From: Thalia democratica | Lineage: Eukaryota | Direction of reading: 5' to 3' | NCBI GenBank assembly: GCA_965202585.1 | Contig: CBDBBG010000062.1 | Coordinates: forward strand, 62,001 to 115,811 | DNA: 53,811 nt | Shown: in pieces, positions 4,136 to 50,539 of the stretch | Position numbering within the stretch: the stretch's first letter is position 1 | Layout: each line of letters opens with the position of its first letter | Notes under the pieces: generated by a model | Seen by the model: the letters and a program-made list of their open reading frames with translations, nothing else | Database searches by the model: none | Told to the model about the DNA's origin: nothing | Translations under genes and position numbers: made by a program

Positions 4136-4849
4136 ATGTAGAAAAGTGATTCTCTTAAAATTTATTATCATTATTTTAAATTATTCATTATTCAACTCTA
4201 GTATTAGTAATACTATTTTTTGAAGAAATATTTTAGTTTTTTATAAGTTTTTATGTGTTTGATAAGTTTGAACTTATCCTTTAAATTGTTGATAAGTTAT
4301 GTAACTTTTTATAACTTCTATTCTAATTTGAATAATTGAAAAAAAAAAACAACAATCTTTTATAGTTAAATTGTTAAACTGAAACATTCCTATGAGGATC
4401 TATGGAGTTTTTCTCTCTAATCCATGGTGAGTGAATTTGATTAAAAACTCACTAAACATAAGTAAATTGAAGTTTTTTTTTTCAGTAAGTAATTAAATTT
4501 AAAATTAGTTTAAGTATCATTTAGAAACAAAGCAACAAAATAATCATTTATTAATCACAATTATAACTTGACAAAACCAAATGTACATCACTCAATGCTT
4601 AAATAAATTAGGGATTAAAGTTTCACCACTACTGTCTTTGGCAGTTGAAAACAAGCCCTTGCTAAAATGACCACCTGCCAAAATATTCAAAACTATGTTC
4701 TAGAAAAATTAAGGCTCTTTGGTTGATAACATATATTTTAAAAAACTACCAATAGTTTTTGATTTCTAAATATTGTTTCTTTTTGGGAACACTTGTTACA
4801 CAATCAGTACATATATTTTAATTCTGTAGAACAACTGTTTTGTTTAACT

Positions 4850-5090
4850 AACAGACTGGACCCAAAAGCTCCAGGAACCAGACATATGTTCATCTCCCCA
4901 ACTAACCAGAAGTGGCCGGCAGCCATAAGCGCCTTGCAACTAGGGAGGAATATTTCCATTTACATTGGTTGTTCATCTTGCCAGGCATCCAGAAGCTCCC
5001 ATTGGCAACCACTTCTGTTTGCTTCAGTGTTGCCGGCAACCAGGGTGGAGTGTTGTGATGTATTTCAACTCTTGCACAATAAACCTCAAA
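4850..5090 (-). pseudogene. GC-rich coding relic of unidentified family
   Basis: GC-rich island in AT-rich DNA; one minus frame reads NTSQHSTLVAGNTEANRSGCQWELLDAWQDEQPM*MEIFLPSCKALMAAGHFWLVGEMNICLVPGAFGSSL with a single stop; family not recognised. Confidence 0.35.
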
Positions 5091-5599
5091 TTAGCAGATC
5101 TAATCTAATTTGTTTTTAAAAAAGTATTTGATATATTTATACTTAAATTGGACTAAACAAAGATGCAAATGTCTGTTTTATAATGATAATTGTTTTGACA
5201 AACTAATATGTCAAGTTACAAACAACAGTGATAACAACACCTGATAGCGTTTTTTATAAATTACCAAAAGTTAAATATTTATGTGTATTAAGATAAGATT
5301 TAACCAGTTCTTGAAAAAATTAATTTTGAGTATACTAGGGGCCTATAGGCGGATCCAGTCCGCAATGTATCTTTATTTGAAAAAATTTTGTTATTTAAAG
5401 TTTTATTACATTTAATGCTGTAACTTTTGTAAAATTTCTGGAGTAGAAAAAACTTTTTCAATTTTTTTAAGCCAATATATGTTCAACATAAAGGAAGAAT
5501 AATGTATTTACTCTGTTCTCTGTTGACATTATTGTTGGTGTTAAATTCAGACTGTGTTTCATTTAAAATGTCATTTTTGAGAATTTCAATATCTCTATT

Positions 5600-5930
5600 G
5601 ACACTGTCTTATTCTCTGATCTCACTTTTATGTTATTAATAAAAAGTCTTACCATGAAAGCGTTGTTCAGTTTTGTTACATTCATCAATTTCATTGTACT
5701 TTTATTGAAGAGCTTCATGATCATACCATCTGTGTTTGACCTGTTCAATGGTTGTTTCTAGCTGAGAGGGATTCTCCCCTCACCAACAATGAAGAAACTC
5801 CTGACGGGAGGAACTCCTGACGGGAGAACTCCTGGTGTTCTTATCTTCTCATTCTGGAAAGTTACCACGCAGTCTGCACTGTCTTTCGGGACTCGGATGC
5901 AAGGATGAGCATCATCATCTGTAAATCATC
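5600..5930 (-). pseudogene. Decayed exon of an unidentified repeated family (H-x-W-x-x-H motif)
   Basis: Minus frame GENPSQLETTIEQVKHRWYDHEALQ*KYNEIDECNKTEQRFH followed by a gtaag donor; cacagatggtatg.tcatgaagct is shared with about 15135-15170; the donor/intron segment recurs at about 7630-7725. Confidence 0.4.
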
Positions 5931-6149
5931 TGTATTGAACATAAATTAAATTTAGAGAAAACAATTAAATTGTTATTAAGTGACATTTTATAATTTAAAG
6001 TATTTTTTAGTAAACATTTTATCTGATTTATTACATAAGCAAATAATCCTTTTGAACAAATTTTATGTGTGCAATGGCAGAACGTTTTTATCAAATTTTT
6101 CTTCCTTTTCATATTACATAATATATGAAAGTTTAAATAACTTCCAGTA

Positions 6150-6300
6150 AGTTAATTTCTTGTGTTCTTGTTGTTTCTCAAATTTTTGATGTTATCCCTA
6201 AATTGGCTAAATGTCTGTTGTCGCTATTGTACATATGCCTCTCCGCTTTGCAAATGAAATTTTTTCTCTTTTCCATGCTTACGTCTATTTTTGTGCTCAA
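6150..6300 (-). mobile_element. Fragment homologous to the Gypsy pol region at about 45.0-45.1 kb
   Basis: catatgcctctccgctttgcaaatgaaatttttt matches catatgtctctccgctttgcagttgacttc at about 45040. Confidence 0.5.
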
Positions 6301-6416
6301 ATCCTAGGTAAGCTGTGTAGATTTTAGTATTTTACTAAAAGCGTTTACATTGACTCAACTGGTGATGTCATTTTTATTTTTTGAGTTCATTAAAAGTTTA
6401 TAAGATCTGTTTAGAG

Positions 6417-6490
6417 CAGGGTTTCCCAAACTTTTTTGCAAATGGCCCCCTTTAAAGAAATTGAAAAATCAATGGCCCCCTTCAACAAGA
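6417..6490. mobile_element. Left end of a hAT MITE
   Basis: cagggtttcccaaac followed by tggccccc repeats; interrupts a block whose homolog at about 19990-20060 continues without the insertion; right end not found. Confidence 0.65.
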
Positions 6491-6899
6491 TTACTTGCAG
6501 ATATATTAATGACAATGAATTGATTATAGTTGTTAAAAATCTGCTTTTTGAAATAGTTTTTTCCAATTAGATTGTGTTAATAATATTTCTTTTACTACTT
6601 CAAGTCCTCTTTTAAATTCCTGTATTTAAAATGTTTAATGAAGTTTTTTAAATATAGATTTTAAATTTCAACAAGATTACAGACTGACTTAAAGTTTACA
6701 TGCAAAGGTTTTTGATAACTAAACTAGTTTAGAACAAATTTAGAATGTAATCTTTAGTAGTATTGTTACATCTTAATAACAAATAAAATTGTAGAAATTA
6801 TAAAATCACTAAAAATTTTCCTACATCATTAAGCTTTAGTATTTGTATATCATACAATAATGTTATTGAATTGTATTGAAACTTTTTGAGTTTTCCTCT

Positions 6900-6963
6900 G
6901 ACTGAAAGTGTCCGGATAAAAGAGCGTCCGGTTAAGTGAAGTCCGGTAAGTGAATAAGCACTG
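6900..6963. mobile_element. Terminus of a pogo/Tigger-like (Tc1/mariner) element
   Basis: Repeated tccgg(a/t)taa motifs ending ...gcactg followed by TA. Confidence 0.55.
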
Positions 6964-7839
6964 TATTAAGAAACTAGAAAACGCTAAATTTTTAAAATAG
7001 TTTATCTAGTATTTTTAATTTTCATGATTCTCCTTATTGCTCTCTTCTTTTTTAATTGGATTGAGAATATTTTGTTTTCCAGTCTGCAGAGTTTTCTTCA
7101 CATATTCCCACCAATGTGAGGAAAACCACGACTTATTATACTTAGTTTTATGCAGGCATCTCTTAAAATAAACAACTTGTTGGTTTATGGGCTGAAATTT
7201 ACCATTACTTTTGCTATATGTCATTTACATTATTCATCTTTAACCATCAATACTATAAAGATACCCCTAAGAATATATTCATAGGAATATTTTTGTCGGC
7301 TGAACCATCTTTCATTATTCCATTGTGAAATCTTCATACAGCTTGGAAAATACTTTAAGAAGGTTTTTTTGAAAGCTAACTTCAGCTAAGTGTAACAATG
7401 GAAGTGTTAACTTGTGAGTAAAGTAAGAAAGTGCTACAATTTCTGTGACTAGAAATTCAGAGTTTAGCAGTCAAATTCCTATTTAATTCGACATCTTAAT
7501 TTTATTTTTTTAAATTTTTCAATGAAATAAACTTCCCTACTTAAATGAAACACAACTTAAAAGCTTAAAGTATTTGTGTGATTCATTTACATACCAGTTT
7601 ATTTAGGACTTGAAAATTTTCTTAGCTTTTCCATTGAGATTGTATTATTCTCTGATATCACTATTATGTCCTTAATAAAGCGTCTTACCATGAGTGCTAT
7701 ATTTAGTTTTGTCACTTTCACCATTATGTAGTGCAATGAAATTATCTCCTGTGATAACTTCTTTCTTTCGTTTTAAGTATTTTCTTAGAAGACTATAAAA
7801 TAATTACGTAAAGATATTTCTGATAGACTAACCAAGTGT

Positions 7840-7990
7840 TTAATCATTGATGTCTCAAACTCCATGCTCAATTCCAAAGCTTCAATAAGAGCTTTGGTCA
7901 CTAGAACTATTGACAATGATGGATACAGATTTACAACATCAAACGTGCTCAAAATACAATTCTTATCATCAAATTGTTTTCTATTAAACT
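7840..7990 (-). mobile_element. Penelope-like element (PLE) reverse transcriptase slice
   Basis: Minus frame FNRKQFDDKNCILSTFDVVNLYPSL, the PLE RT motif FDVxNLYPSI. Confidence 0.65.
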
Positions 7991-8754
7991 TTTAAATGGC
8001 GTGTGATCTTGACTTTTTCATTAAAATCGTACATCACATGTTTTAACAATTTCTTACAAGCATATAGAAAAAATCTTGTGTTTCCTCATGTATTTTCTGT
8101 TAAAGTTTGGTATCACAAATTTAATTTTTTTTAAATATAGTTATTTCATTACGAAGAGTAATAATCTCCATCTAACTGATGGATTTAAAGAAAATTTAAA
8201 CCGATTTTTCTTACTTGTATACTCAAGAAATTATTTACTTGTTCAAATTAATTGATTTTTCATCCACGTTTTCAACTATGTAAGAGGTAACGTCTTTCTC
8301 TTTTTGTTTTGTTGTTAGTTGCGTCAATCAGCATTTACATCACCGCCCAGGTTCTTAATCTAAGCATTTTTTTCTTTAACTTTGCTATTGAAGTGTTAAA
8401 TGCAGGTGGAAAATCTAGCTTTTAAGCATGATGTTTTTTGTTTCCCCTCATTTTGATCCATGTAAACTAGCTATATACACTTTGATATCAGGCATTTACA
8501 TTATACTAGCCACCTGATATACATAGTTTTCGTTGCATATTCTGATAATCTTCTTAGATTATTGCCGCTAACCTCCTAAAGATCGACTTTGATAGGCTTG
8601 TTTTTAACTAGTTATTTGATAGTATTGTCGTTGTAACAGTTTTTGCTAAGCTATCTGATCTACTTCTCAAATGTGTTTAACCTTTTACGATTTTTTAAGT
8701 ACTTAACAATTATGGTTTAAATCAAAGCCAAGTTTGCACACAACAAAAACTTAC

Positions 8755-9250
8755 CAGTTCTTCAGGTTTCTGAGCTCTATGCGGTTCCCACTGTTAGAAA
8801 TTTAATATTTTAATTTATAATATACAAATACAAGTTGTGAAAGCTTTTTTGATTAATTAGGACAATTTTGACCAAGTAAACTTTCTTGCATGACTTAAAT
8901 AATAAACAACTGTTTTAAAAGTTCAGGATCTTCCTGATTTTTATAGCCGACACAATAGTCTAAGTTAACTTGTAAATTTTATGGTTTGTAACTACTTATG
9001 TACTTGTAAAATGTAAGTGTAAGTTAATCTAAATTGTTTGAATATAGCAATACTTACTTGGTAGTTCTCTTATCAGTGGTATTATTTGTTTCCAGCCAGT
9101 TATGAAAGTTATTGTCTTTCCATAGTTTTATCTGTATTTAGAGATTGAACTGGTTGAACGACGGCAACGGGAGCATCGACTCTGAGCATCCAATAATTTT
9201 AGAATTTAAAGCCCCAAGCACATAAACAATAGACTGGCCAAAAATCAAAA
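8755..9250 (-). pseudogene. Two phase-compatible decayed exons (9058-9250 and 8755-8790) of an unidentified gene
   Basis: Both exons have AG acceptors and GTAAG donors; the join reads LIFGQSIVYVLGALNSKIIGCSESMLPLPSFNQFNL*IQIKLWKDNNFHNWLETNNTTDKRTTNGNRIELRNLKN with one stop. Confidence 0.5.
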
Positions 9251-9599
9251 CTAAAAACTACTTAAAATCTATAAAGTGAAGGTGTTGCTTACAAACCAAA
9301 CTACTAATAAACTAGATACCTCAAACTAAATCAATGGTTAAAGAGATGAACACAACTAATTACTTAAAAATTTAACTGGTAAATATTTTATTTGAATCAA
9401 ATTCTTTTTATTATTAATCGAAAATGTTCAAGATTTTTACAAGATACTTGTTCATTTTGAAGTTCGTTTGACATTTTTACCGAACAATAAAAGAAATAAT
9501 TTTGCCCAACCAACATTGTTAAAATGATATTTGCATGTATATTTTTCTGTTATTACCTCTGAGTGAGTAGTTATTTTTATAAGGTTTAAAAAAGTTAGT

Positions 9600-9805
9600 G
9601 AATCAATAGTAATTTCGTTGTTAGTTAGTTGAAAAAAAGTAATAAGATCAAATTCAAGTGTTCTGTACTCAAAAGTTTTATGTCAAGCTTTGTCTATGTA
9701 TGACGAATATGAAATATTGCACCGATTAAAGATTGATGTTGTAAATTTTCTTTGAATAGATTCTAGTTGGTTGATGTCTTTTATAGAACATGGAGACCAC
9801 AAAGT
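9600..9805 (-). mobile_element. CR1/L2 LINE ORF2 C-terminal slice
   Basis: Minus frame LWSPCSIKDINQLESIQRKFTTSIFNRCNISYSSYID...EYRTLEFDLITFFQL, matching the CR1 motif WSPxxxKDINxLExIQRKFT. Confidence 0.8.
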
Positions 9806-9924
9806 TTTTTTTTACAAAAACACACATTTCTATCTTCTATTTAATTCGATGGTCCACCGCATAGTAAAATATCGAATAAGACTTCTTGTCTGTACTTTGT
9901 AGAGTTTTTGAAAATTTGCAAATC

Positions 9925-10480
9925 AGGAGTTGTGGTGATGCGAATTTTGAAATTGTTGTGACTTTCTCGAAATCACTTATCCACAGTTGTGATGAAAGCG
10001 GTTTTATTCTGTTAAACGTAGAGAAAAGTCTGGTGTACGAGTCCTTTTATTTATTTTAAGGTAAAGCGTACACTAAAGGGAATACAGGAGGTTTTTATCT
10101 AAACTGGTTTCCATGTATGGTTTACAACTAGTTAAAATGCCTTGTTGATGCAGTACTAAATATACAGTCAGACATTAACTTTTTGCAACTAGCAAGCAAG
10201 TCAAGGTTTTCTAAATCGAAAAAATAATTGTTCTTGACACATCTACTTCATTTACAGAATGATGCAGAATGATCGTCTAACCTAGTTAAATACTCCGGCA
10301 ATATCAAGTCTTGCAAATTAGTTGGTTCAGGAACAACATTCCAAGTTTTCTTCTCGTGTTGCGCGGCATGATTTCATAAGCCTTCCGCCAACTTGCGCCT
10401 GTCTGGAAAATTGGATAATTTCTAAGCCATGCCGTATTAATGTTCGTATTTCGTTATTTTTGCAAAGACTCTGACGTTGT
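9925..10480 (-). mobile_element. MULE (Mutator-like) transposase relic
   Basis: Minus frame VPEPTNLQDLILPEYLTRLDD...FFDLENLDLLASCKKLMSDCIFSTAS...TIHG...VFPLVYALP*NK*KDSYTRLF...ISDFEK; matches the MULE core (DGTF..AP, PLVYALLPNK, DFE); several stops. Confidence 0.85.
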
Positions 10481-11199
10481 TGAATTTAGTCCCGTGATCC
10501 GATTGTTCCTTCAAACAGTTTACCGGGGGTTAAAAAAACTAATCGAGGTTTTTAAGCAAGTTTAGCTAATGCTGGCTTCCTTGTTCATTTAGATTAGAAT
10601 TGTTTTTAATTAAAAAAAAAATTAAACAAATTAATTGATCAGAGGGATCATACAATATGCTACTAATTTTTAAGCAGCTACTTCACTAATAAAAGCTTAT
10701 TCATATAATGCCTAATTAGAATCTTAAATTTTTCACATACTTATGAAATATTACATTAAGGTTCATTATGGATTGCCAACAAGATTTTAAATAATTGTTG
10801 ATTGGAAAAAGTTACCTTTCCAGAAATTATCAAAAAGCTGCATTTGTGTATTTAATTCTTAATATTTCTAAATTATGTCTGCACTTTGCCTTAATCTTGC
10901 CATAATTTTTCCTCAGTATTTTGATAAACTGTTTTATTGAATATGTAAAGGTAGTTTAATAAAAAACTGTGTTATTCACCATGTCAATTATTATTTCATA
11001 TTTCATACATATTTCCCCGCTCCAGTTGGGAAGTTTTTTTTATTGTCTTTAACTGTAAGGAACGCGTTTATCTTAGAGAGTTAAGGTATTTTCTTGTTTT
11101 TGAGGTTGAAACATTTCGAAGAGATTATTTCCTGGGATTCTTGGTTTATTTTGTCAATAATATTATCATCAGACGTTTTGTATGTAGTAGTCAGTCAAT

Positions 11200-11400
11200 C
11201 CTTCATTAGCTTGTTGTAGGGTTTTGCGCTTGTGCTATGCATAACCTACCCACCAAAGAAAATGCATAGTAATGTAGTCCATTTGTTTTACAAAACTCCC
11301 TGTTACATGAAGAAATAACGACATAAACGGTACTTTCTTCATTTGCTCTTTTAAATGTCAAAAAGTTTTCGTCAGTATACATAGTGAAACTTGACACGTC
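11200..11400 (-). repeat. Unidentified coding-like repeat, second copy at about 23565-23712
   Basis: cataacctaccc...gcatagtaatgt...ataacgacat..acggt...ttcatttgctctttt..atgtcaaaaag.tttcgtcag occurs in both copies; minus ORF YTDENFLTFKRANEESTVYVVISSCNREF. Confidence 0.55.
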
Positions 11401-11499
11401 ATAGTTTAGTTGCTGCACGATTCTAAAAATAGTTTATTATAATTAAATTTTTTTTCCAACTTTGTGAAAATGCATTTACCAGTTTTATTTATACCTACA

Positions 11500-11780
11500 T
11501 GATCACAAAAAAGCATGTGTTCTGACATTTTATTGGTGCTGGTATCTGGAAATCTGCAGTAAACTAGTAATGCGCTTCACCAGACACATCAACACTCTCA
11601 TCCAGATGTATAGAAAACTGATTACACAAACGTAATTTTTCCAAAAGCTGTTCTTTCATATCTTAAGCTACAAGCGTGCATCTTCTAGCAATTGTTCTGG
11701 CAGACAAAGGAATGGTATCAATTAGTTTAGCAGTATTATAAGTAATGTAGTTATGTTTGTCGCTCACATCTACTTAATAA
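11500..11780 (-). mobile_element. hAT Charlie-type (ZBED5/GTF2IRD2-like) transposase relic
   Basis: Minus frame KLIDTIPLSARTIARRC...DMKEQLLEKLRLCNQFSIHLDESVDVSGEA-LLVYCRF...EHMLFC; diagnostic IPLSxxTIxRR and LDESTDVS motifs. Confidence 0.88.
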
Positions 11781-12289
11781 TACTTAATCCTTATACTTTC
11801 TTTTAAACAACAGTTTTCTCACTTAGTCATAAATGAAAGTATATTTAACAACTTTACTTCTTTCTACAGTTTTATGTAACTATGTCTGGTTATAGTTTTA
11901 TTAGTTCATTTTGTAATACAAAAAAGCTATAAATTAGCCTTAAAATAGTTGTCTAATTAAACTTAAACCAAAACACACTAATTGCAAAGCTTTCGTCATT
12001 TATTTAGTACATTTTCAGTGCAAAAATACGACTTATTCAATATATGTGAATCTAATTTATTTTATAAAGTATTGCATATTGAAGCTATTTGGGTCACCAG
12101 CTGTGATTTTTATTTTCTAACTCTTAATGTTAAATTAAGTTTTTACTTTTTTAAAAAAAATGGATCTACCCTTATCCTTGGGAAGCTTTTAGATTGTTCT
12201 TCTTTATACTGAAAAAGTGTTATTTTAAATGAGCTTTCTTTTGGCACCTCAAAATGTTAAACCTGAACAAATGCACACTTTTTATTTCA

Positions 12290-12480
12290 CAATTTTTTAT
12301 TTCTTAAAACAGATTTTATATGATTAAAATCTTATTTTAAGTATGGAGACCAGATTGGTATGCTGTAATATCCTTAGTTATTTCACTAATTTGCTCCTTT
12401 TAAACCTAATTTTATTTCCTCCTTTGTGTTTATGCAATGTTATCATTAGTACCTTTCCAAGGTACTCAACATTGGAACTG
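12290..12480 (-). mobile_element. CR1/L2 ORF2 C-terminal slice (heavily decayed)
   Basis: Minus frame IPIWSPYLK*DFNHIKSV. Confidence 0.55.
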
Positions 12481-14611
12481 TTGAAACCTTACAATTTTGC
12501 ATGCACCTAGCATGTTTTCCGTCATTGCCACTAATTACCCATGTGCTTTAAGGTTTGGGTTCTATTGCATCAAAATCCGTGTGATTATTTACTTCAGCAA
12601 ACCAAATCACAATATCTTGTCCAAGCTGTTTGCAGAATTTTTCATTGGATCTATAATGTATAGAACCTTGTTGTAACCTTGTTGTGTTTGTCAAACATAA
12701 TAAATATCCAGTGTTTCTGCCCATTTACAAATCTATCTAAATCCTTGTTATTTACCGAAATTAATTAGTTTGTTTCTTCTTAAAAAGGACTATCTCTATT
12801 GCCTCCTTGAATTAATATTTTTTATTGTTTTACATAAACATGTTTCTAAGAAATGAAAATTTTACCGCTGTCACTGCGACCAATTCTTGTTTTCCTATTT
12901 TTATTGGTGTTTTGTTAATTTCGCTTGATAACTCCATTCTTTCTTTCTTTATCAATTTAAACTTTCCAAACAACGTTACATCCCTTGACCGAGCACACTA
13001 AAGTAAGTGCTAAGAATTTAGTTTTAAGCTTCTAGTACGTGCGTTTAAATGCATAACAATGGCAGCGCTTCATTTCAGGGTGAAAATTTTTGTGTGACAC
13101 CTGTAATAAACAAAACTTAAATGTTTTATGCTTTATCTAAAATGTATGATCATAATGATTTATAACTAAAAAATATTTTCTAAACGTGAAATAAATTAAT
13201 AAGTTGTAACATTTTAATTCTGTTTCTAGCTTGAATAAGTAATACCTTACATCATTTGAACCTATTGGTTCTAAACATTCTTTGGTTTCATCATACATCT
13301 TTTCCCATTATCTTTAGACACTGTTAATGTCATCCTTAAGAGTTTATTTTTCTACTTGTATTCCCTTTTGATGCATCGTAAGACGGTTGTGGCAGATATA
13401 TTCTATATTTTTTACTTTTGTCGTATTCAAGGTAATAACATATACCCTCGAATTATCTGTGTATAAGTATAAAATAAAACCTGTTTAGTTGAATAAACTG
13501 AAATGTTAACAACTTTCATTTGCATCTGAACATTTAGACAAAGATAAGATATCATCTGTTATTAAAGCCATATCATCTCCTGTACACTCACTTATTGTCG
13601 TTGTAACAGTTTTTTCTAAGCTATCTGATCTATTTCTCCAAATGTATTTAACCTTAAACGATTTTTTAAGTACTTTACACCAGCAGGCTTTAAAACCAAT
13701 TTTCTAACCAGCAGGCTCGTATAAAATTGCTAAAAGCCACTTGGCTTCCTCGAGCTCCTCTTCCGCTGTTTCCCAATTTTCCGGCACATTATTAAGGGCG
13801 TAGAACGTTTCAAACCGAAAGTTGAACTCAAGAAGTCTCTTATACCTGCAGACCAACTTGAATAAAAATAATTCACGTTTTTCTCAATCACAGTGATTGT
13901 TATGTCTTTTTTCAGATTTGCATAATAATTTGTTTGACTCATTTCTACGTGCCACCTATTTGTTTTTATTATTATTCGTTTTTATACGAAATTTATAACT
14001 GAATGCACTGCGTTGACCTCTTTGTAGGCCTTGTGGTTCAAATTGATTGACTATTCATCCACGTTTTCAATTAAGTAAAATGTAACGTATTTCTCATTGC
14101 CTTTTCATATCAAATATGTTGCATATGAAAACTAATAACTTTGTAATTGTTTATATGAATAAAACAATATGTAAATCAAGTTAACAATATTTAAGTTTTA
14201 AAATCTCCTGTTTGTTTATCTACGAAGTTTTCCTCCAGCACTTCCCACTGTAAGGCTTTCACACTATGTGCAACTTTACTAATAAAAAGCAAGTGAAATT
14301 ATTTGAGTGTTGTTTGAAGTCCGTCAGAAAACTAGAACATTTTGATAATGAATTTTATAATAAGATAAAAAAGTCTAAAAACTTTTTTGCATACCACATC
14401 TTTGTATCGCATACTTAAACACTTTTTGCCTTCTAAGATTGCAATGATTACCTTTGTAGTATTATCATAACATAAGTCTAGATTTCCCGACGTATGAAAG
14501 CTTTAAAAATTCTAATAAAACCTTTCTCTACTCTATTTTTTATTAGTATGTGCATACTATGTTCGGAGATGTCCAGTACTTTGTATAGTCCGTGAAATAT
14601 TTTTTGTTTAC

Positions 14612-14865
14612 CTGTTTAAGCCAAACTCTTTTACAAGTGAACATTTTTATTTTTTGCTGATTTTGCATAATCTAAAATTAATCAATCTTGTAAAGAAAGG
14701 TAGTTTGTCATTTGTTTTAACAATTTTTTCTTTTATAAAACATCTTGAAATTAAGTTGAATACCTTCACTAGTCTGTTGAGTCTTTGGACAAATTTCTGA
14801 TAAAAATTCCAGCCGTTTTGAAAAAGCAGCTAGTGCAGCAATCAGCCCGCAATTTTCTTTAAAAC
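14612..14865 (-). pseudogene. Calpain-like cysteine protease (CysPc) exon relic
   Basis: AG..GT-bounded segment reading GFKENCGLIAALAAFSKRLEFLSEICPKTQQTSEGIQLNFKMFY, then after a frameshift KIVKTNDKLP...YAKS; parallels calpain GDCWLLAAIASL...VP...GIFHFQFW...VVDDRLP. Confidence 0.6.
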
Positions 14866-15330: not shown

Positions 15331-15559
15331 ATATAGTTAGGAGAATATAAGTTGTAACTGAATCTGAACTAGATCACCTAAGCTTCTCATGAACTTTCAT
15401 GTTTTTCCCCGAATCACTTGTTTCAGTTCGACTTCTGTTTTAGCGTAACGACTGCTCTTTTTTTTCACTTTTTAACTTTTTTTTGTTTGAATATGATGCA
15501 TTTGCGTTCAATATAATCTTAAATTCTTCTCCGTAAGTCTGTTTAAATTGCTCGTTAAG

Positions 15560-15810: not shown

Positions 15811-16494
15811 AAAAATTTTTTAAACTTTGAGATTTCTGTCATAAAAAAAAGTAAAATCAATATAAATAAACTTTTCCAACTTTTTTAAACTTTTTATTTT
15901 ATTTTTACTGCATCGTATGTAGATTTGTAAGCAAGAAACTTTGTAACACTATCTTTTTTGTAAGACTTTCTTTTCAATTAATTTCATTGCAGTATAATAG
16001 CTTCGAATATGTTAATTATCATTGAAGTTCTTCTCTGATTTTTGATAAATATTTCTTTTCGAGGTTTGCTTTTGAGACTTTGAAAAATGCCCGATAAAGC
16101 TTCTTTTAAAGAAGAAGTTGAATTTGTATACTCAAAAATTTATTTTAACTTAATTAACTATATCTTGGGAAATGATTTCCAAATTTCCTTTTAATGTAAA
16201 CAGTTATTTTTCAAAACTCCCTTTTTAGTTGAAAAAAAACTGTTACATATTAAAGCTGTTTTAAATATTAAACTCACCAATATTATTACCCAGAACATAT
16301 AGTTTTCTTGCACACACTATTACACTACGTATTATTTAGATTATACTTATTTTCTCGTGTTGAAGTTGTACTACTTCTCAATCTCCATTTTTGTAACTTA
16401 TGTAATCTCTTGTGTAACACTGTTTTCATGTTTTCTACTACTACATTGCTTGTTACTTATTCATAAATATTAAGCTGTCATATCTATAAATTCC

Positions 16495-16700
16495 AATTAT
16501 TAATTATTATTGGAGTTTATTTGGTGAAAATGAACTCTGGCATTAAAACCTGAGCCGCTTAAACAATACACACGGAAAAAGAAACAAACAAATTACATTC
16601 AATGAAAATTAAAAAAACTAAACAAAACATAGTAATAAAAAATTACAAACAAATAGCCCTGTATGATGAAATATAACTTGGTATACACAAAAAAAAAATA
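16495..16700 (-). mobile_element. Probable LINE 3' tail (same family as 25560-25845)
   Basis: Reverse complement reads tgtttaagcggctcaggttttaatgccagagttc...aaataaac...aataataat. Confidence 0.5.
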
Positions 16701-16719
16701 CAAATAGCAAATTTTGATA

Positions 16720-17230
16720 GAGAAGTTGTTTGGGATTTCTTGAGTACGCTGTATTTGTGCTGTTGCCATCTTTTTTTGAAAGATAACCCTGTTGATCCTA
16801 TGTATTCCTTATTCCTAATATAAACCTTATAGATACCTTTTAGTAAGCATTCTCCTTTAAAAGGGCAGACGGTTTTGTCCCTACAGTTGCAAGTCTTATC
16901 TTTTTTGTTTGAATCGTTTAAAATCCTTCTGTTATGGGTATTTATTACGTTTTTTAAGGTTTGGAAGGCAACTATATGAAATTTTAATGGTGTTCTTATT
17001 AAAGATCTTGTGAAGTTTGTTATTTCTTGGAAAATCGTACAAGATCCAAGAATTTTTTACTAATGTTTGTTTTTACAGAATTGCAGAATGGGGGGTTGAA
17101 GTAAATAGTTTTCCTGGACTTTCTGGTCTTTCTGTTGGGCTTTTAGATAGTTTCTTTGTAGCTTTTGAGTTTGTTGTATCTGCTTATAGTTAAGGCTTCA
17201 TTGTAGTCTTTTTTGATGTTATATGTTAAG
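16720..17230 (-). mobile_element. PLE C-terminal region with GIY-YIG endonuclease
   Basis: Minus frames RKTIYFNPPFCNSVKTNI...FPRNNKLHKIFNKNTIKISYSCLPNL, then CNCRDKTVCPFKGECLLKGIYKV...EYIGSTGLSFKKRWQQHK. Confidence 0.9.
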
Positions 17231-17247
17231 TCAAGCACTCAATGACT

Positions 17248-17520
17248 TACAATTAGTCTTCGAATTCTGCCCCTTACCAGAAGGATTATTTTTTGGCCTA
17301 AGCATTTGTTCTACTTTTTCTAGTTGGTTCTCAGTATTTTTTATTTTCAAACTGTTTTTCATGAGCAGCTAGACACATGTATCTAAAAAATTATTATTAA
17401 AGGTTGCTTATCTAAAGTAATAAACTTAAACGTATTTAAGTTCTATCAAAGTTGTAGTTAACCTGGATTTTAAAAGTTTTTCAGAAAATATTCTGCAACG
17501 ATAGGCGTCATTTTATTTGA
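17248..17520 (-). repeat. Exon-plus-intron block duplicated at about 44165-44450
   Basis: gaattctgccc.ttaccagaa...gacacatgtatctaaaaaattatt...aggttgcttatc...gtttttcagaaaat.ttctg occurs in both copies; gtaagt donor on the minus strand. Confidence 0.75.
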
Positions 17521-18929
17521 GTTGTTAATTAATATAAAGTTCTTTTTAAAGGTTTTTCTTTTAAGTAACAATTTTATTTAAAGTTAACAAAGTCTCACCT
17601 TTTTTGCAAAATCCGTTAAAAATAAAAAAAACTATTTTTAACTTCCCTTGTCAATCCTAAAATAAATTATTTTTAATGAATTCAAAAATTGTTCGTAAAT
17701 ATTTCCTTATCAATATAATTCGTAAAAAAAAACTCACTTCCACTAGTAATCAATATACACACTTTTTCGAATATATTGTGTCATACTCTTTACATGTCAG
17801 AATACGACAAAATGTGGTCATAAGTAAGGTTTTCACCTCGCTATCTTTAACCTCATGTCTTGTAAAGAACCGTTTCATGCTGTACATCGCAAACACGAAC
17901 AGCACGTTTCATATAGGAATAAAACAGAAGTTGTTTTTCTAGAACAACCCTAAAGATTTACCATTACTATGCAAAATCATATAGCATAATTTCAGGTATA
18001 GATCTAGCGTGGTGCCATTGAATTGCTCACACACTGCGTGAAGTATAGGATAGCTACAATCGCATTCTACCCTTTTCGAAAAAGTTGTTTCATGAATTTT
18101 AACTGCTAACAGTATAATCAACTAACTTTTTTTTACTCTCACTTTTTAGTCTTCCCACACCTCTCACTAATAGAGCCAGCCACTGCCTGTAGGATGTTCT
18201 GTCGAGGTTGGTTGAGGTTTGCTTGACACTTTTACAGGTGGGTGGTTGTGTGTTTTAAACTTTTTTAAATACATCGTCGTTTCCTATATAAAAACAGATT
18301 ATTCAAAATTTTTCTTAATTACTATAACAGTTTAAATAAACAATAAAGTAATCTCGAATTAATGCAACTGTATAGAGTAGACATTTTAACTTTCTATTTG
18401 ATCGAAAAAGCCATAAGTTGAGTCGATGCACAGCACCAACTCTGGCTTATTCCGTAGTTTTTGTTTTAAAATTCTTATATGATTTTCTTTATGAAATATG
18501 ATTCTAAACGGAAAAATGGCAAGATCTTGGACTACTCCTTTTACAATCTAAAACATAGTTTTGTTATAGATGTACAGTTTGTTCTATATTTTTGAATAAA
18601 CTTACTTTTTTTTTGTATTCATTTTCAATAAAAAAATATTCTTATGTTTATAACTTCCTATAAACATTATGGTTTCTGTCTTTATAAAACCTAGTCTTTC
18701 CAACATTTTCTATCATACATTTAATAATAATAGCAACAAATTCCATGGACTTGCAAGTTTATCTGACAATACTAAAATTCAATTGTGGAGTTAATTTCAT
18801 TGTGAATAACATTTTTGTCTTTTGAATAACAAAAGTGGAAGTCTGTCTCTATGTGTCTTATCACCGCTTTTTCTAGTTTTAATGTTTAGAGTGTTTTTTT
18901 TAAACACTTAAATTATAATAAAGTCATAC

Positions 18930-19135
18930 CATTTGAGACTTTCAGAAAATCTTCATTCATTTGAGACAGGAAATGGCACATTGTAACTCTATTTTTATCT
19001 CATCATCTCAGCAATTACTAAGTTACTGGTTTGAGCAATCTATTTGAATAAGGTGCTTGAATTAAGATTTTTTTGCAGCCCATTTTATTTTCCAACCATG
19101 GAGGCCGCTCTGTCTGAACCTGTTTATGAATATAA
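18930..19135 (-). mobile_element. hAT transposase exon relic (second catalytic Asp region)
   Basis: Minus frame GSDRAASMVGK*NGLQKNL...IDCSNQ, corresponding to hAT DGAxxMxGxxNGLQ...HCxxH; bounded by AG and GT. Confidence 0.65.
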
Positions 19136-19239
19136 GTGAAGCAAAAAATTTGGTTTTTAATAAAAAAATTGTTTTATAAAATTTGAAGTCTGTTACTACA
19201 AAAAGATTGGTAGTTTAAATACTGCCAATAAAAAATGTT

Positions 19240-19502
19240 TTCCTATAGATATTTGTTGAAAAAATGTTTTATCTTTTGTTGTCATAAAATAGCACTTGGT
19301 TGTTATCTTCCACTTCTTAAGTGAAAGAACTCTTTTCATGTATACAATTCAATTTTTGAAATATAGCTTCGTTTTAATTTTCTGTTTTGGTTTTAACTAA
19401 ACAAACGTCAACGTATCTATTGTAGAAAACCTGTGACAACAGATCTTCAGCCGTTTTAGGTCTAAATACCCGACAAAAATGTTAGCAAGTGTCAGGCCCA
19501 AT
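19240..19502 (-). mobile_element. PLE reverse transcriptase slice
   Basis: Minus frames LANIFVGYLD, FYNRYVDVC, LNCIHEKSSFT*EVEDNNQVLFYD and STNIYRK. Confidence 0.8.
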
Positions 19503-19989
19503 TTTTAGTTCATTAATTTATTTTTCTTGAACTTATTAGTTAGGTGAACGCACTAAAACTGTTTTGCAATTTTTTTGGTGTTAATCATTATCACACTAAT
19601 GTAAATACATCATTATACATGTAATTTATAAATAATTCGAATTGTTTTCTAGTACAAAGCCCACATCAGGATTTTTATTTGCACTTGTTAGCATGATTTC
19701 AGTACTAAAAACATCATAATATTTTTACTTCTTATAAGTGAATTAAGGTTGTACTATATTGAAAAAACAGTTACCATTATTTAATAACTGATAGTAAAAT
19801 GTGTTTATTGCTTTATCAATGTTCAGCAATGGACGATAAAAAACCTATTTTTGATTTTTCAAGTTGTGATAAAGAAATAAAAGTTTTTTGCCTAATTTAT
19901 TTAAATTCCAAAATTTTATATAATAAATTTAACAAAAAATACCAAAATGTCGACATTTGAATTGTTGTCATTGTGGAACTTATTGCCAA

Positions 19990-20340
19990 GTTTACATTGA
20001 CTCATCTGGTGACGTCATTATTAGTTTTTGAGTTCATAAATATTCAATAGACCTGTTTAGAAAGATGCTCGAGCTATCTGTACCTTTTGGCTTAACTGGA
20101 CGTCAATGCCAACATTACACATTAGGTTAAACGTTTACTTTTTTTGTTTTTTGATAACTAATTGAAGGCATTGAAGCACTTTTTGAAATTTTTTCATTTT
20201 TTACTCAGCAAACGTGCATAATCATACACTCTTAAATTTGAACCTGCTCGTAAAGGCATGACACTTTCTTGATTCTCTTGCACATACTATTGATCATGGT
20301 GACACCAGTTGTGGCCTGCTCTGTATAGAATTTGCAATAT
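19990..20340 (-). pseudogene. Unidentified coding relic, possible third H-x-W-x-x-H copy
   Basis: Minus frame YRAGHNWCHHDQ*YVQENQESVMPLRAGSNLRVYDYARLL; 19990-20060 is homologous to about 6340-6416. Confidence 0.3.
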
Positions 20341-21164
20341 AAAAACAAACTGATTTTAGTGTTAAATGAAATTTTTAGATTCCCAAAGGGAAGTTTTAGA
20401 TTTTTACTTTTTTGAAAAGTTTGTTTGAACTGAACATGTTAATTTTTGACGCTAATACAAATTAAAACGTCAATAATTTCTCCTTGTATTTTTTTTGCAT
20501 ACCAGACTTGAGAAAAATTCTTAATCTAGTTTCACTATTGTTAACAAAAATTTTTCTTTAAAAAATTGGCTGGGGCTGGAAAATATCTGCTCACAGTTTT
20601 AAAGTCATGCCAATGCTGTCTTTCTTTGTCTTAATTCTAGTATGACTTAATAGATTTAGCACTTGAGTTAGTTTTTTTAAGCAAAAGGTAATACCGTCTT
20701 CTGCTATTGCTGGGTGGTCAGCTTCAAGCACTTCTCCTCTACGTCATTTTTATCGAATACTTTATGATTCCTTTTTTAAACCGTTTCGTTGTATCTAGAG
20801 TATATAAAAAATTAAAAACCACAAACAAATACCATTAAAGCGGTTTTTTTGTTAAAATTAACAAAGTTTTTTTGCGCTACTTACACATATCAGTATACAA
20901 AATCTGTAAAAGAGGTGTAAGTACTTCGAGATTTAAAATATAATAATAATTTTAAAGTTAGGTCAACACTCACTTTTAAAAGCAAACATATTTTTTATAC
21001 ACGATAACGTTTATACTTTTGTTGATAACCTATTATATAAGTTTTAATAAGTTAATCAGATTTTTACGCTTTTTTTCGCTAAAGTTTATATTTTGTTTGT
21101 TTATTATTAATGGATTACATTTTTATTACAATTTATATTAAGGGTCATTTTTGCACGAGGGGAC

Positions 21165-21750
21165 GCTTTTTTGTCATCTGCGAAGAGGTTAATGTTGCTG
21201 CTAACATCAACTTCTGAAGCTATATCATTCATGTAAATAATGAATAATAGTGGGCTAATAACCCCTCCTTGAGGGACTCCATTAAAAACAGGTAAAAATT
21301 ATGAAAATGAGTTGTTAATTACTACTTTTTGAGTTCTATTATTTAGAAACTATTTATTTAGACTGCAATGAATTTTGTATTGCAATAATGCTTTATTTTT
21401 TTTATAAGTTGAGAGACAGAGTCAAAAGCTCTTACTCTGTATATATTACATAGTAGACTTAATGCTTAAAAAAGACACCAACCAAGAGTGTAAGCAATTT
21501 AGTAATTGGAAACAAACGTTTGGTTAGGGAGAAAACCTAATTTTAAATAAAAATAAAGTTATTTAAAAAAAAGATGATCAAGTATTTTCATATAAAATTT
21601 TATGTTCAAATATTCTGCAAAGCTAATTATCATAAAAATTGGTCTCTAATTTGAATGGTTGTATTTGCTACCTTTTTTGTGTATTGGTATTTCAAATAAT
21701 ATTTCTAAAGAATATCTAAAATTATGCAAACGCAAAGTTATGGGAGATCC
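21165..21750 (-). mobile_element. CR1/L2 reverse transcriptase core relic
   Basis: Minus strand, motifs in the correct order: IPIHKKGSKYNHSN*RPI, RAFDSVS, FLNNRTQKVVINNS, GVPQGGVISPLLFIIYMNDI, NLFADD. Confidence 0.92.
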
Positions 21751-21779
21751 CTCTCAAAAATTTAACTATGTTGCTATTA

Positions 21780-22060
21780 TCATTAATGTTAGAATCGAGC
21801 TGATGAATTCTATCATCGCCTGTTTATATTTTAACTGTTTACCAGCAGGCTTTATTCCCGAGACAATGTGTTCTATGCACAGGTCGCGAGAGTTTTGGGT
21901 CGATTTTATCAATTGAATAAACTCAACAAATGAGGGTGGTTGCCTGACAGAACACTATACAGAGCCTGATCTCTGCATAGTTGTTTGTTCTATCTCCACC
22001 AGTCAAAATCATTCCATGTTGGCTTCTAAGGTGAGGAGGGAAGTTAGGCTGACTTCTAAT
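21780..22060 (-). mobile_element. MULE transposase C-terminal slice
   Basis: Minus frames PNFPPHL, LTGGDRTNNYAE and PSFVEFIQLIKSTQNSRDLCIEHIVSG; match MULE FPPxLWN...RTNNxxE...PxxxxFIxxLK. Confidence 0.7.
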
Positions 22061-22589
22061 AGCTAATGTTTTTTTAAGTTGTTTTTTTGGTAAAAATTAC
22101 TTTTTAAGGTAATTTAATCAATTTTTCTTTCAAGCTTTTCTGCAGCTGAGCTTAAAAAGGAGTCGAAGATATAGATGCTTTTTTGTATTATAAACTGTTT
22201 ATAAAATCACTAAAATTATAAAATTCTATTTGACATAAAAAATTCATTCGTATACTTTTTATGAATATGATTTATTTACCTAAAATGTTTGTGTAGCACC
22301 TAATATCTTGATATTTAAGCAGGTCACTATAAATATTGTTTTGTAGTATTCAATTATAAATTCAAAGAATTTATTTCATTTGATCTAAGTTTAATTTCTT
22401 ATATATTGTTTGATACAAGAATTTAATGACTACATCAATTAAAGACTTTGAACGGTATACTGCCCTTATATTTTGTTAAGCAAAAATACTGTATGCTATT
22501 TGGAACATGAGAAATTTTCTTCTTAAAATTGAATAAATTATTTATCTCTATTTGAAAATTCGGTTTAATATTGAAAGCTATGGATCTAT

Positions 22590-22900
22590 TCGGTGAATTA
22601 AGAAAGTGATTCTCTTGTGATTGGATTGTCGAATCAACTCGATCCAATTTATTTTGTTTTCTTTTTTCATCTCGTAGCTTCCTAAAAATTTTCAGTTGTT
22701 CAATGGTTCGATCCGGATTTATGAATATTTTAACTTCAAATTCATGTATCACATATTTGAGATTTCTCAGCTTAATCAGTCTTTCTTTAGCTTTTGTGTA
22801 ATTGAGTTTACAATTATAGGTCTGACTTATCCAACTTAAAATTTACCTATACAGTATAAGGATTTTAGTTCATGTTATTCGATTTTATTTACACCTAATA
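22590..22900 (-). mobile_element. LINE (CR1/L2-type) ORF1 C-terminal slice
   Basis: Minus frames RPIIVKL and KERLIKLRNLKYVIHEFEVKIFINPDRTIEQLKIFRKLRDEKRK; typical RPIIVKF...IFINPDLT..Q...KKLREE pattern. Confidence 0.65.
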
Positions 22901-24548
22901 CTTCTTGTAGGACTTTTAAAACTTTGTAAACCCTGTAAAGGAACACCTTAATTTTTAGGAATATTAAATACGATTATATTTAATCTTTTTTTTTCAATCT
23001 GTTTTTGTTCGTTATCAGCATCTATTTTATCTTTAACAACATCTATATCTTTAACATATAGATAAAAATTTTTGACATCATCATAGTTTTTTTTATTATA
23101 AAATACATTTAAAATAGCTTAATCTTTTCACTGTTTATATACTATTTAACACAGTATTTTACCTAAAACTTAAATTTAAACTAGAAATACACCCAAAATT
23201 GTGTACTTCTAAAAACCTGGAGGAAAAGAAACTGTGATGTACTTTCTCTCCTCAATACAGTTTTTCCATATCAAATCTTTGTTTTTGGTCATTTAAAAGT
23301 AGCATTTCATCAGCTTTGGTAACATTTAAAAGATTTAAAAAGTAACTGTATTATACCTTTGCATAATTATATTCTATTTATACTTTGCTAACAACATAAT
23401 AATCTTGACCAGTGCCCGACATAACAAACTCTGTAACTGGAATAGGAGGTCTGTTAATTCCATTACCAGTAGAAGAAAACTTAAGTTCTAATGGTATACT
23501 ATAACGTTTAAATATAAAATAGTATGTGATGAACTAGTTTTACTATAATTAACTACTATTGTTAAATCATAACCTACCCTCCAAAAAAAGGGCATAGTAA
23601 TGTGGACGTTTTTTCATTTAATTTATAATGCTCCTGTTTGCATCAAGATATAACGACATTAACGGTCTTTTTTTCATTTGCTCTTTTGTAATGTCAAAAA
23701 GCTTTCGTCAGATCCTTACCACCTGGTGTTAATAGTGACTTAGAGGTGAAAACAGTTCTAGGGTTGGATGCAAAATAAGTAATTTTTATTAATTGTCAAA
23801 TTTTCTGTTCTAACATCTCTGAGCTTTTATAAATGAGTGAAAATTTTAAAGTAATTACACATTTATCAGTGAAAAACTTTAAACATACAATCTTTAATCT
23901 ATTTTTTATCTCACAAAAAAAGGCAGACTTTTTTTAAAACTAAATTAGTTTAGTAAAATTTTTTGTTTTGAACTGAACAAAAAAACATAGTTGAAGCTGT
24001 TTTTTTTTTTGACATTCAAACCTTTAACAACTACTGAAAACTGATACTTTGCTAAAAAACTCATCTTAAATAACAGAAAAAAAAACAAGTTCTAATAATC
24101 AAAATAATTTTAAAGTACAGACTTTTTAAATTTTTCAAAGAAAATGTAATACAAAAATTTTTTTTTTGATTTGTGAAACATACAAATAACATTATTTAAC
24201 AAAATTCTAGGTTAACTTTGACAAAAAAAAACAGTTTATTTATATTTTTCAAGTTCATGATAAATTCTAATTTTGATTGCAGTACAAATTGGTAAATGTT
24301 GATGAGTATTGTAATGGGATTAAAATTAGCATTAGTTAATGGTAAACAAATTTGCAAACACTTAAAAACAATATTTGATAAGTATGTACATATAAAATAT
24401 CTAAATAATTTAACACATGATAAAACATTTACAAAAAAATATATATATACAAATTATGATTATAATTATGATAGTATAGAAATACTTAAACCTTTCATAC
24501 TTGAATAACATTGAACATTAGACAATTTATATTTATAAATTTTTACTC

Positions 24549-24990
24549 ACCCAAAAATCTACTTCCTGAAATATCAGTGCTTTCGTTTAAGTAGAAAGAG
24601 CACTGCTGTAAAATCATGTCACTTATAATGAACTCTCCATATATAGGAGCAAGTACATTGACTGTCATAGAGGTACATTTTGTACGCCGAAGTGTACAAC
24701 TGTTTGGAGTATTACCAGTTGCTTTAAAAACATCAAAATTCTTGTAAGTAAAATGCTTGGTACAAGGCAAGTCTTACTTCTACTTGACGTTGTTGTATTT
24801 TTATATCTGTAATGCAATCATCATCTTTTGCAGAAGGTTGTGGTAATAATTCATGCAATAGGTGCTTATTTGTTTTTACGTGCATTTTTATTGTATATTT
24901 CTTTAGGAGTAATTGAATTTTACTTTTTTTACAGTGATCCCTGTTCCCATCATCCCATGGCTGAATCCAGTCTAAAAGTTGCCATGTTTA
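24549..24990 (-). mobile_element. hAT transposase N-terminal exon relic
   Basis: Minus frames DWIQP...HVKTNKH, VEVRLALY and LRRTKCTSMTVNVLAP...FYLNESTDISG, then a gtgagt donor; RTKCT..NVLAP and DESTDIS are hAT motifs. Confidence 0.8.
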
Positions 24991-25074
24991 TAAGTTAAAA
25001 CACAAAATTAGATATGTTTTTAAACAGTTTTTGTTTATTAGCTTCACAAAACTAGTACTTGCACATAATTATTA

Positions 25075-50535: not shown

Positions 50536-50539
50536 ATAA

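What the first reader, a model, noticed from the sequence alone, without database searches (positions are those of the whole stretch)
4800..25000. Uni-strand patchwork of transposon slices: candidate flamenco-like piRNA cluster (block 1)
Seen: at least 13 slices assignable to a family in this 20 kb (PLE x4, CR1/L2 x4, MULE x2, hAT x3) plus a calpain relic and a Gypsy-related fragment, all on the minus strand. The unassigned exon-like relics also point minus, and the plus strand looks T-rich by eye. With block 2, about 20 of 20 assigned coding slices share one orientation, which is very unlikely if insertions were random. It is especially odd for DNA transposons. Established: uni-strand piRNA clusters such as Drosophila flamenco hold TE fragments antisense to one long precursor, and Hydra has PIWI proteins and piRNAs. 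Inference: a plus-strand precursor across this block would yield antisense piRNAs against many TE superfamilies at once.
Basis: partly seen in the sequence, partly recalled or inferred. Interest (0 to 1): 0.88.

Follow-up and report, generated by a model that had tools for sequence, protein, structure and literature searches.

The report
Strand-polarised array of transposon fragments
A 20-kb stretch, part of a domain of about 70 kb, holds decayed transposon fragments that all point the same way; this is the known look of a one-strand piRNA source locus, but no RNA data exist to show that it makes small RNAs.

Summary
The core observation holds. In window 4.8-25 kb, eight transposon (TE) slices have protein-level support: LINE/CR1 x3, Penelope-like (PLE) x2, MULE, hAT and Gypsy. 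All lie on the minus strand and none on the plus strand. Across scaffold C71 43.5-111.7 kb the count is 22 of 22.

An annotation-free test agrees. All 25 internal DNA repeat pairs obey the polarity. The plus strand is T-rich, as expected if A-rich TE sense strands lie on minus.

"Hydra" is unsupported.

New context:
- The polarity flips to plus-sense at C71 22-40 kb, the other arm of an old inverted duplication.
- Block 1 is partly an old direct duplicate of C71 43.9-51.1 kb.
- Later insertions still obey the polarity.
- A 30-kb sample of chromosome C5 shows the same architecture.
- First readers flagged at least eight other windows of this genome for the same pattern. None has been followed up.

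No plus-strand exon was found. No RNA run exists for this organism, so piRNA output is untested.

Best reading (about 0.45): a long plus-strand non-coding transcription unit of the uni-strand piRNA-cluster type. If so, it is a new member of a known kind.

The parts
4800..25000 (-). Block 1: polarity domain in which every recognisable TE slice is minus-sense. The plus strand is T-rich.
7857..8030 (-). Weak PLE reverse-transcriptase slice, with the motif FDVVNLYPS read by eye at 7788-7991.
   Evidence: searches (translation; E 0.3): motif-level support only
9182..9805 (-). CR1-type LINE 3' fragment with sharp ends; many genomic copies at 85-88% identity.
   Evidence: DNA copies; tblastn 2e-30
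9942..10409 (-). MULE transposase slice; an old paralogue lies at C71 45503-46124.
   Evidence: (5e-42)
11027..11242 (-). PLE slice, N-terminal part of the ORF.
   Evidence: 1e-22
12302..12694 (-). Heavily deleted LINE copy: post-endonuclease part at 12554-12694, C-terminal part at 12302-12367.
   Evidence: 3e-5; 1e-8
14484..14644 (-). Gypsy-type pol C-terminal slice.
   Evidence: 9e-6
16702..17280 (-). PLE 3' fragment with a GIY-YIG endonuclease domain. It is 90-94% identical to many copies and absent from the paralogous interval, so it inserted after the duplication.
   Evidence: (2e-65)
17561..18633 (.). Repeat of about 1.07 kb, 85% identical to a few loci; no coding assignment.
19115..20627 (.). 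Low-copy 1.5-kb unit. The long matches found were to two other co-oriented arrays: C71 48973-50486 (direct, 90%) and C10 40.065 Mb.
20624..22147 (-). CR1-type LINE fragment (RT at 21122-21705; Pfam RVT_1 piece at 21110-21298). 91% identical to C5 15.0016 Mb, in inverted orientation.
   Evidence: (7e-43)
23867..24984 (-). hAT-derived element: zinc-finger/DESTD N-terminal exon family. It has a sharp left end, and many copies are 82-88% identical.
   Evidence: 2e-19
25362..25460 (+). First plus-sense LINE fragment; marks the right border of block 1.
   Evidence: E 0.002; skew turns positive
33239..33754 (+). ARIH1-like Ariadne-domain relic. It is plus-sense with one in-frame stop at 33503-33505 and lies in the weakly A-rich middle region.
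   Evidence: E 0.002 to ARIH1 residues 471-545; no IBR on the scaffold
41133..49656 (-). Block 2: eight further slices, all minus-sense (PLE x2, hAT-N, Gypsy integrase, hAT, CR1 x2, KAT11 domain).
50533..53811 (.). Satellite of about 63 bp running to the scaffold end.

Best explanation
Block 1 is one segment of a larger strand-polarised graveyard of truncated transposon insertions. The graveyard spans C71 about 40.7-112 kb on an unplaced, satellite-flanked scaffold.

The most likely cause of the polarity is a long plus-strand, non-coding transcription unit. In such a unit only antisense insertions persist, whatever the transposon class. That is the architecture of a uni-strand piRNA cluster, whose precursor would give antisense piRNAs against PLE, CR1, Gypsy, hAT and MULE families that still have intact copies in this genome.

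Shown: the polarity, its extent, its persistence through later insertions, and the absence of plus-strand coding exons.

Inferred: transcription, its direction, and piRNA production.

The plus-sense arm at C71 22-40 kb would then be read leftwards, giving a divergent two-arm locus made by an old inverted duplication.
For: - 22 of 22 protein-supported slices from six superfamilies are minus-sense over 68 kb, including DNA transposons and an LTR element, which have no known reason to insert in one orientation (my knowledge).
- 25 of 25 DNA repeat pairs obey the polarity without any annotation.
- Insertions later than the block duplication also obey it: the PLE 3' fragment at 16702-17222 (90-94% to many copies), the CR1 at 9182-9804 versus a PLE in the paralogous interval, and the 95%-identical KAT11 element, which is plus-sense in the plus arm and minus-sense in block 2.
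- Elsewhere in the genome the same PLE often sits in inverted pairs, so the family itself has no fixed orientation.
- The fragments are related to families with intact ORFs of 590-1314 aa.
- No plus-strand exon was found.
- The genome has at least 7 Piwi-domain loci and two Maelstrom exon matches.
- A second array with the same property lies on C5.
- TE strand bias predicted unistrand clusters in Drosophila, and small-RNA data validated them (PMC10643416).
- Most cnidarian clusters are unistranded (PMC5731801: 402 of 457; PMC3592418).
Against: - There is no RNA evidence of any kind.
- No promoter was identified. The GC-richer patch at 4850-5060 has few CpGs.
- AATAAA and ATTAAA are not depleted on the plus strand beyond what composition predicts: 39 observed against 30.8 +/- 5.2 expected.
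- Part of the co-orientation is inherited, because block 1 is collinear with C71 43.9-51.1 kb and the plus arm is an inverted copy. The independent events are therefore fewer than 22.
- No random control region could be fetched, so the genome-wide background of local polarity is unknown.
- The middle region (about 28-40 kb) is weakly plus-sense, so one precursor across the whole window would not be purely antisense.
Confidence: 0.45

Rival explanations
1. Silent heterochromatic TE graveyard. Its polarity comes from its history: a small co-oriented ancestral patch was copied by direct and inverted segmental duplication. Target-primed retroelements then added a mild insertion bias, because they prefer T-rich nick sites on the already T-rich strand. 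No transcript or piRNA is involved.
For: - Collinear direct matches link C71 43.9-51.1 kb to 70.8-82.7 kb, and collinear inverted matches link 24.0-33.8 kb to 40.7-48.4 kb.
- The C5 array contains a tandem repeat unit of about 5 kb.
- Satellites flank the scaffold.
- The clearly young conforming insertions are PLE and CR1, both target-primed elements.
- Plus-strand poly(A) hexamers are not depleted.
Against: - Block 1 has no internal repeats of at least 150 bp, so duplication cannot explain why its eight different slices agree.
- hAT, MULE and Gypsy slices also conform.
- From base composition I calculate a nick-site bias of only about 1.5 to 1 (my own estimate), far from 22 to 0.
- The shared fragments occur in shuffled order between C5 and C71 yet keep their relative orientation.
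Confidence: 0.28
2. A long plus-strand transcription unit that is not a piRNA source: a giant intron of an unrecognised gene, or a long non-coding RNA. Sense-oriented insertions would be purged because they bring splice and poly(A) signals.
For: The same polarity data as the main explanation apply. Antisense TE bias in introns is well established (my knowledge).
Against: - No plus-strand exon or domain was found.
- No IBR exon lies on the scaffold, and the ARIH1-like piece carries an in-frame stop.
- The polarity continues for 9 kb beyond that relic, into block 2.
- Intron biases known to me run from about 60:40 to 80:20, not 22 to 0.
- The scaffold is satellite-flanked and unplaced.
Confidence: 0.15
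3. Chance plus selection after the fact. A reader scanning many windows picks the few where a handful of insertions happen to agree.
For: - Block limits were drawn after seeing the orientations.
- The genome holds about 15,000 windows of this size.
- Block 1 alone gives only p = 0.008.
Against: - 22 of 22 over 68 kb, and 25 of 25 repeat pairs.
- My prediction that C5 14.995-15.025 Mb would be a plus-sense array was borne out: 5 of 5 slices, and positive AT skew across the 30 kb.
- First readers flagged the same pattern in at least eight other windows. These notes are unchecked.
Confidence: 0.07

Closest known systems
Drosophila flamenco and flamenco-like unistrand piRNA clusters (PMC10643416)
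   Same: Tens to hundreds of kb of truncated TE fragments, nearly all antisense to one inferred transcription direction. They lie near heterochromatin and evolve by insertion and duplication.
   Different: - flamenco's strand bias is carried by Gypsy-family LTR elements only. Here LINE/CR1, PLE, hAT, MULE and Gypsy all conform.
- flamenco has a known promoter, transcript and piRNAs. None of these is known here.
Cnidarian unistranded piRNA clusters (Nematostella, 402 of 457 clusters, PMC5731801; Hydra contig clusters, PMC3592418)
   Same: One-strand loci are the common cluster type in an early-branching animal group.
   Different: Those clusters were defined from small-RNA reads. This locus is defined only from DNA, and the organism is not shown to be a cnidarian.
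Bidirectional, divergently transcribed piRNA clusters of mammals (my knowledge; the comparative roadmap PMC11615739 came up in a search but I did not read it)
   Same: Two arms of opposite polarity meet at a central point, here near C71 37-40.7 kb.
   Different: - Mammalian pachytene clusters are not enriched for antisense TEs.
- Here the two arms are copies of each other, made by an inverted duplication.
- No central promoter was found, and an assembly gap sits at C71 38623-38722.
Antisense TE bias in introns of protein-coding genes (my knowledge)
   Same: Selection by a transcription unit against sense-oriented insertions, acting on all TE classes.
   Different: That bias is partial. Here it is complete, and no exons were found.

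Membership tests
Uni-strand (flamenco-type) piRNA cluster | A dense array of TE fragments with strong bias to one orientation | tested here: met
   8 of 8 slices in block 1 and 22 of 22 over C71 43.5-111.7 kb. 25 of 25 repeat pairs conform.
Uni-strand (flamenco-type) piRNA cluster | Abundant 24-32-nt, 1U-biased small RNAs mapping uniquely to one strand | not testable with these tools
   No RNA run holds this DNA. The read-laying run failed.
Uni-strand (flamenco-type) piRNA cluster | A long single-stranded precursor transcript from a defined promoter | not testable with these tools
   No RNA data exist. No Rfam match in the window. No CpG-island-like start at the 5' border.
Uni-strand (flamenco-type) piRNA cluster | The fragments match TE families that are, or recently were, active in the same genome | tested here: met
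   - PLE fragment: 90-94% DNA identity to many copies; relatives carry 590-717-aa ORFs.
- Gypsy integrase slice (block 2): 74-78% aa identity to intact pol ORFs of 1314-1391 aa.
- hAT slice (block 2): 78% aa identity to a 657-aa ORF.
Uni-strand (flamenco-type) piRNA cluster | The host has a PIWI-clade pathway | tested here: inconclusive
   Piwi-domain matches at 7 or more loci and Maelstrom first-exon matches at 2 loci. AGO and PIWI clades could not be told apart.
Uni-strand (flamenco-type) piRNA cluster | Not simply an intron of a protein-coding gene | tested here: inconclusive
   No credible plus-strand Pfam domain and no IBR exon on the scaffold. Short exons would escape these tests.
Segmentally duplicated heterochromatic repeat array | Collinear paralogous blocks within and between loci | tested here: met
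   Direct and inverted collinear matches within C71. Low-copy units shared with C10 and C5. This explains part of the polarity, not all of it.

The most novel reading that the evidence does not exclude
This genome holds a family of strictly strand-polarised TE archives. They spread by direct and inverted segmental duplication, and the inverted copies create divergently read two-arm loci. The polarity filter acts on every transposon class, so cluster duplication, not only new insertion, expands the small-RNA repertoire in a non-model animal.
Probability: 0.2. Interest if true: 0.6.

Novelty: new member of a known kind. Interest (0 to 1): 0.4.

Why it matters
If small RNAs confirm it, this locus and its relatives on C5, on C10 and in other flagged windows would give a DNA-only way to map piRNA source loci in a species that has no RNA data. 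They would also show clusters growing by duplication, including a palindrome that creates a second, oppositely read arm.

If the locus is silent, complete orientation purity across six TE superfamilies would need another domain-scale directional process. That outcome would be the more surprising one.

As it stands, this is a well-documented candidate of a known kind, not a discovery.

Tried and rejected
- Counts of stop-free ORFs by strand showed no asymmetry and told me nothing.
- Pfam on 353 stop-free pieces was very insensitive: 4 credible hits in all, every one on minus. I therefore built a strand-neutral ORF library from this genome.
- RNA evidence: two run searches found only 3-4 runs of unknown kind from 2025 and no RNA run.
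- Calpain relic: not found with two calpain ORFs of this genome, nor by PDB searches of three candidate pieces.
- Identifying the organism:
  - Exact look-ups of three intact TE proteins found nothing.
  - The Atlas gave only generic LINE clusters.
  - For an intact hAT, the closest named homologues are fish, bivalve and beetle proteins at 28-35% identity, and none is from Hydra.
- Poly(A)-hexamer depletion on the putative precursor strand: none found.
- Rfam: no match in the window.
- Retro-origin of the intronless host-gene fragments: dropped. The calpain and RBR families of this genome are themselves large arrays of intronless genes.
Full report
WHERE THE WINDOW LIES
The window is the last 53.8 kb of an unplaced 115.8-kb scaffold, G000:C71:62001-115811, in an 801.8-Mb assembly. 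The scaffold starts with a tandem repeat of about 650 bp and ends with a satellite of about 63 bp. It has assembly gaps at C71 38623-38722 and 65827-65926. I fetched the upstream 62 kb so that I could study the whole scaffold.

CHECKING THE OBSERVATION
ORF counts by strand are symmetric and told me nothing. Pfam on every stop-free piece of at least 40 aa in 4.7-25.1 kb found one RVT_1 on minus and only a chance-level hit on plus. That method is too insensitive for fragments this decayed.

I therefore built a strand-neutral library of intact ORFs from this same genome, checking that each ORF lies on the strand of the Pfam or protein match that led to it:
- LINE ORFs from the RVT_1 hits
- MULE
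- a 657-aa hAT
- two PLE ORFs, found with the GIY-YIG piece at 16646-17056
- a 180-aa hAT N-terminal exon family
- a 1314-aa Gypsy pol

tblastn with this library against the whole scaffold gave 22 slices between C71 43.5 and 111.7 kb. Every one is on the minus strand. Eight lie in block 1: CR1 9403-9805, MULE 9942-10409, PLE 11027-11242, LINE 12302-12694, Gypsy 14484-14644, PLE 16703-17280, CR1 21122-21705 and hAT-N 24546-24984. Eight lie in block 2.

At relaxed thresholds, two more weak minus hits fall where I had read RT motifs by eye. The first plus-sense hit, a LINE at 25362-25460, sits just past the right border.

I could not reproduce the calpain relic, a second MULE, or three hATs.

The T-richness of the plus strand is real: A 0.320, T 0.389. 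It is what minus-sense TEs predict, because TE ORF sense strands in this genome have A>T, with AT skew of +0.02 to +0.27.

AN ANNOTATION-FREE TEST
I defined four polarity domains from the AT skew: C71 22-40 kb as plus-sense, and 40.7-58, 66.8-87 and 103-112.5 kb as minus-sense. All 25 non-redundant DNA repeat pairs of at least 150 bp that link or lie within these domains have the relative orientation the polarity predicts. The pairs are not all independent, but the test needs no protein library, so it answers the worry that plus-strand slices were missed.

WIDER STRUCTURE
C71 22-40 kb is plus-sense:
- LINE endonuclease at 23260-23718 (Pfam 7e-6)
- KAT11 domain at 25913-26305 (8e-28)
- hAT-N at 33937-34263 (3e-36)

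Its matches to 40.7-48.4 kb are collinear and inverted at 80-86% identity. The flip near 37-40.7 kb is therefore the centre of an old palindrome. The flip lies inside a contig, 1.3-2 kb to the right of the gap.

Block 1 is partly an old direct duplicate of C71 43.9-51.1 kb. Five collinear matches at 78-90% identity include a low-copy 1.5-kb unit. The only other long match found for that unit is at C10 40.065 Mb; a short partial match lies in the C5 array described below.

Between the conserved anchors the two copies carry different later insertions, and these obey the polarity too. Block 1 gained a CR1 3' fragment and a PLE 3' fragment. The PLE fragment is 90-94% identical to many copies, and elsewhere in the genome those copies often sit in inverted pairs. 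A 2.2-kb KAT11-bearing element, 95% identical between its two copies, is plus-sense in the plus arm and minus-sense in block 2. The polarity is thus a lasting property of each domain, not only a relic of one duplication.

A SECOND LOCUS
The hAT-N search showed a cluster of same-strand hits at C5 14.85-15.08 Mb, and a block 1 LINE fragment matched C5 15.0016 Mb in inverted orientation. I predicted a plus-sense array there.

The 30 kb I fetched has 5 of 5 slices on the plus strand and positive AT skew throughout. Of its 15 DNA matches to C71, 12 fall in the minus-sense domains and all are inverted. Two fall in the plus arm and both are direct. One falls between the domains in the window's middle region. 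The shared pieces are in shuffled order, and part of the C5 array is a tandem repeat of about 5 kb.

First readers also flagged at least eight other windows of this genome for co-oriented TE debris. None has been followed up.

TESTS OF THE RIVALS
Intron of a gene:
- 181 plus-strand pieces across 4.7-50.5 kb give no credible Pfam domain.
- The one plus-sense gene-like piece is an ARIH1-like Ariadne domain at 33239-33754. It matches PDB ARIH1 residues 471-545 at E 0.002 and has an in-frame stop at 33503.
- A full scan of all 89 IBR candidates in the genome finds none on this scaffold.
- The same scan and the calpain scan show that RBR and calpain genes in this genome are large families of intronless genes in tandem arrays. 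The intronless state of such relics therefore says nothing about retro-copying.

Poly(A) signals:
- AATAAA and ATTAAA on the plus strand are no rarer than dinucleotide shuffles predict. This gives no support for selection on a transcript, and it does not exclude one.

RNA:
- No RNA run holds the DNA. Only 3-4 runs from 2025, of unknown kind, hold part of it.

Background:
- Control regions could not be fetched.

THE ORGANISM
Exact look-ups of intact TE proteins find nothing. The nearest named homologues of an intact hAT are fish, bivalve and beetle proteins at 28-35% identity, and none is named from Hydra. The assembly shows 9-10 chromosome-sized contigs, the largest at least 116 Mb. From memory, that does not fit the 15 chromosomes of Hydra vulgaris.

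The genome does have Piwi-domain matches at 7 or more loci and two Maelstrom exon matches. A piRNA pathway is therefore plausible but not shown.

VERDICT
The polarity is real, strong and wider than reported. It covers all TE classes and persists through later insertions. Duplication explains part of it but not the agreement of eight different slices inside block 1, which has no internal repeats.

The best explanation is a long plus-strand non-coding transcription unit of the uni-strand piRNA-cluster type (about 0.45). The rivals are:
- a silent duplicated graveyard with an insertion bias (about 0.28)
- a non-piRNA transcription unit (about 0.15)
- chance (about 0.07)

Uni-strand clusters are well known in flies and cnidarians (PMC10643416, PMC5731801, PMC3592418). 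If confirmed, this is a new member of a known kind.

Noticed in passing
C71 25477-27688 (locus L032) and window 47097-49289: A 2.2-kb element carrying an intronless p300/CBP-type KAT11 domain (Pfam 8e-28) occurs twice on the scaffold. The two copies are 95% identical and in opposite orientation, each matching the local polarity. I did not check its copy number in the genome or whether it is mobile.
   Followed up: partly
G000 C8 19.25-20.06 Mb, C1 3-6 Mb and other sites: More than 130 intronless calpain-domain ORFs of about 420-440 aa lie in tandem arrays. On C8 a minus-strand block is followed by a plus-strand block.
   Followed up: no
G000 C2 63.2-63.7 Mb, C4 73.2-74.2 Mb, C5 14.3-14.56 Mb: An expanded family of intronless RBR (IBR-IBR) ORFs of about 320-540 aa in tandem arrays. 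The ARIH1-like relic in the window is probably a fragment of this family.
   Followed up: no
G000 C5 14995001-15025000 (L054-L056): A 30-kb plus-sense co-oriented TE array with hAT-N slices spaced about 5 kb apart. It shares shuffled fragments with C71. More same-strand hAT-N hits extend from 14.85 to 15.08 Mb.
   Followed up: partly
window 50533-53811; C71 1-4917: A satellite of about 63 bp (93-95% between units) runs to the scaffold end. A tandem repeat of about 650 bp starts the scaffold. Together they suggest a pericentromeric or otherwise heterochromatic origin.
   Followed up: no
genome-wide: Copies of the PLE 3' (GIY-YIG) fragment often occur as close inverted pairs, for example C5 40792551(-)/40793436(+) and C2 19650585(-)/19651502(+). 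From my knowledge, inverted pairs are typical of Penelope-like elements. The single copies on C71 differ from this.
   Followed up: no
G000 C8 51627842-51628750: A full-length Piwi-domain match (E 1e-80) lies inside an uninterrupted 946-aa open frame, so this Argonaute/PIWI gene may be intronless. The other Piwi loci are split into exons.
   Followed up: no
L050 1143-1682 and more than 60 genomic copies: A family of short elements whose only open frame is an identical 180-aa hAT N-terminal exon (zinc finger plus DESTD motif). It is likely a non-autonomous hAT derivative.
   Followed up: partly
window 4850-5060: A patch with 47% GC and few CpGs lies at the left border of block 1 and is open in several frames on both strands. 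It has no Pfam, PDB or Rfam match, and its nature is unknown.
   Followed up: partly
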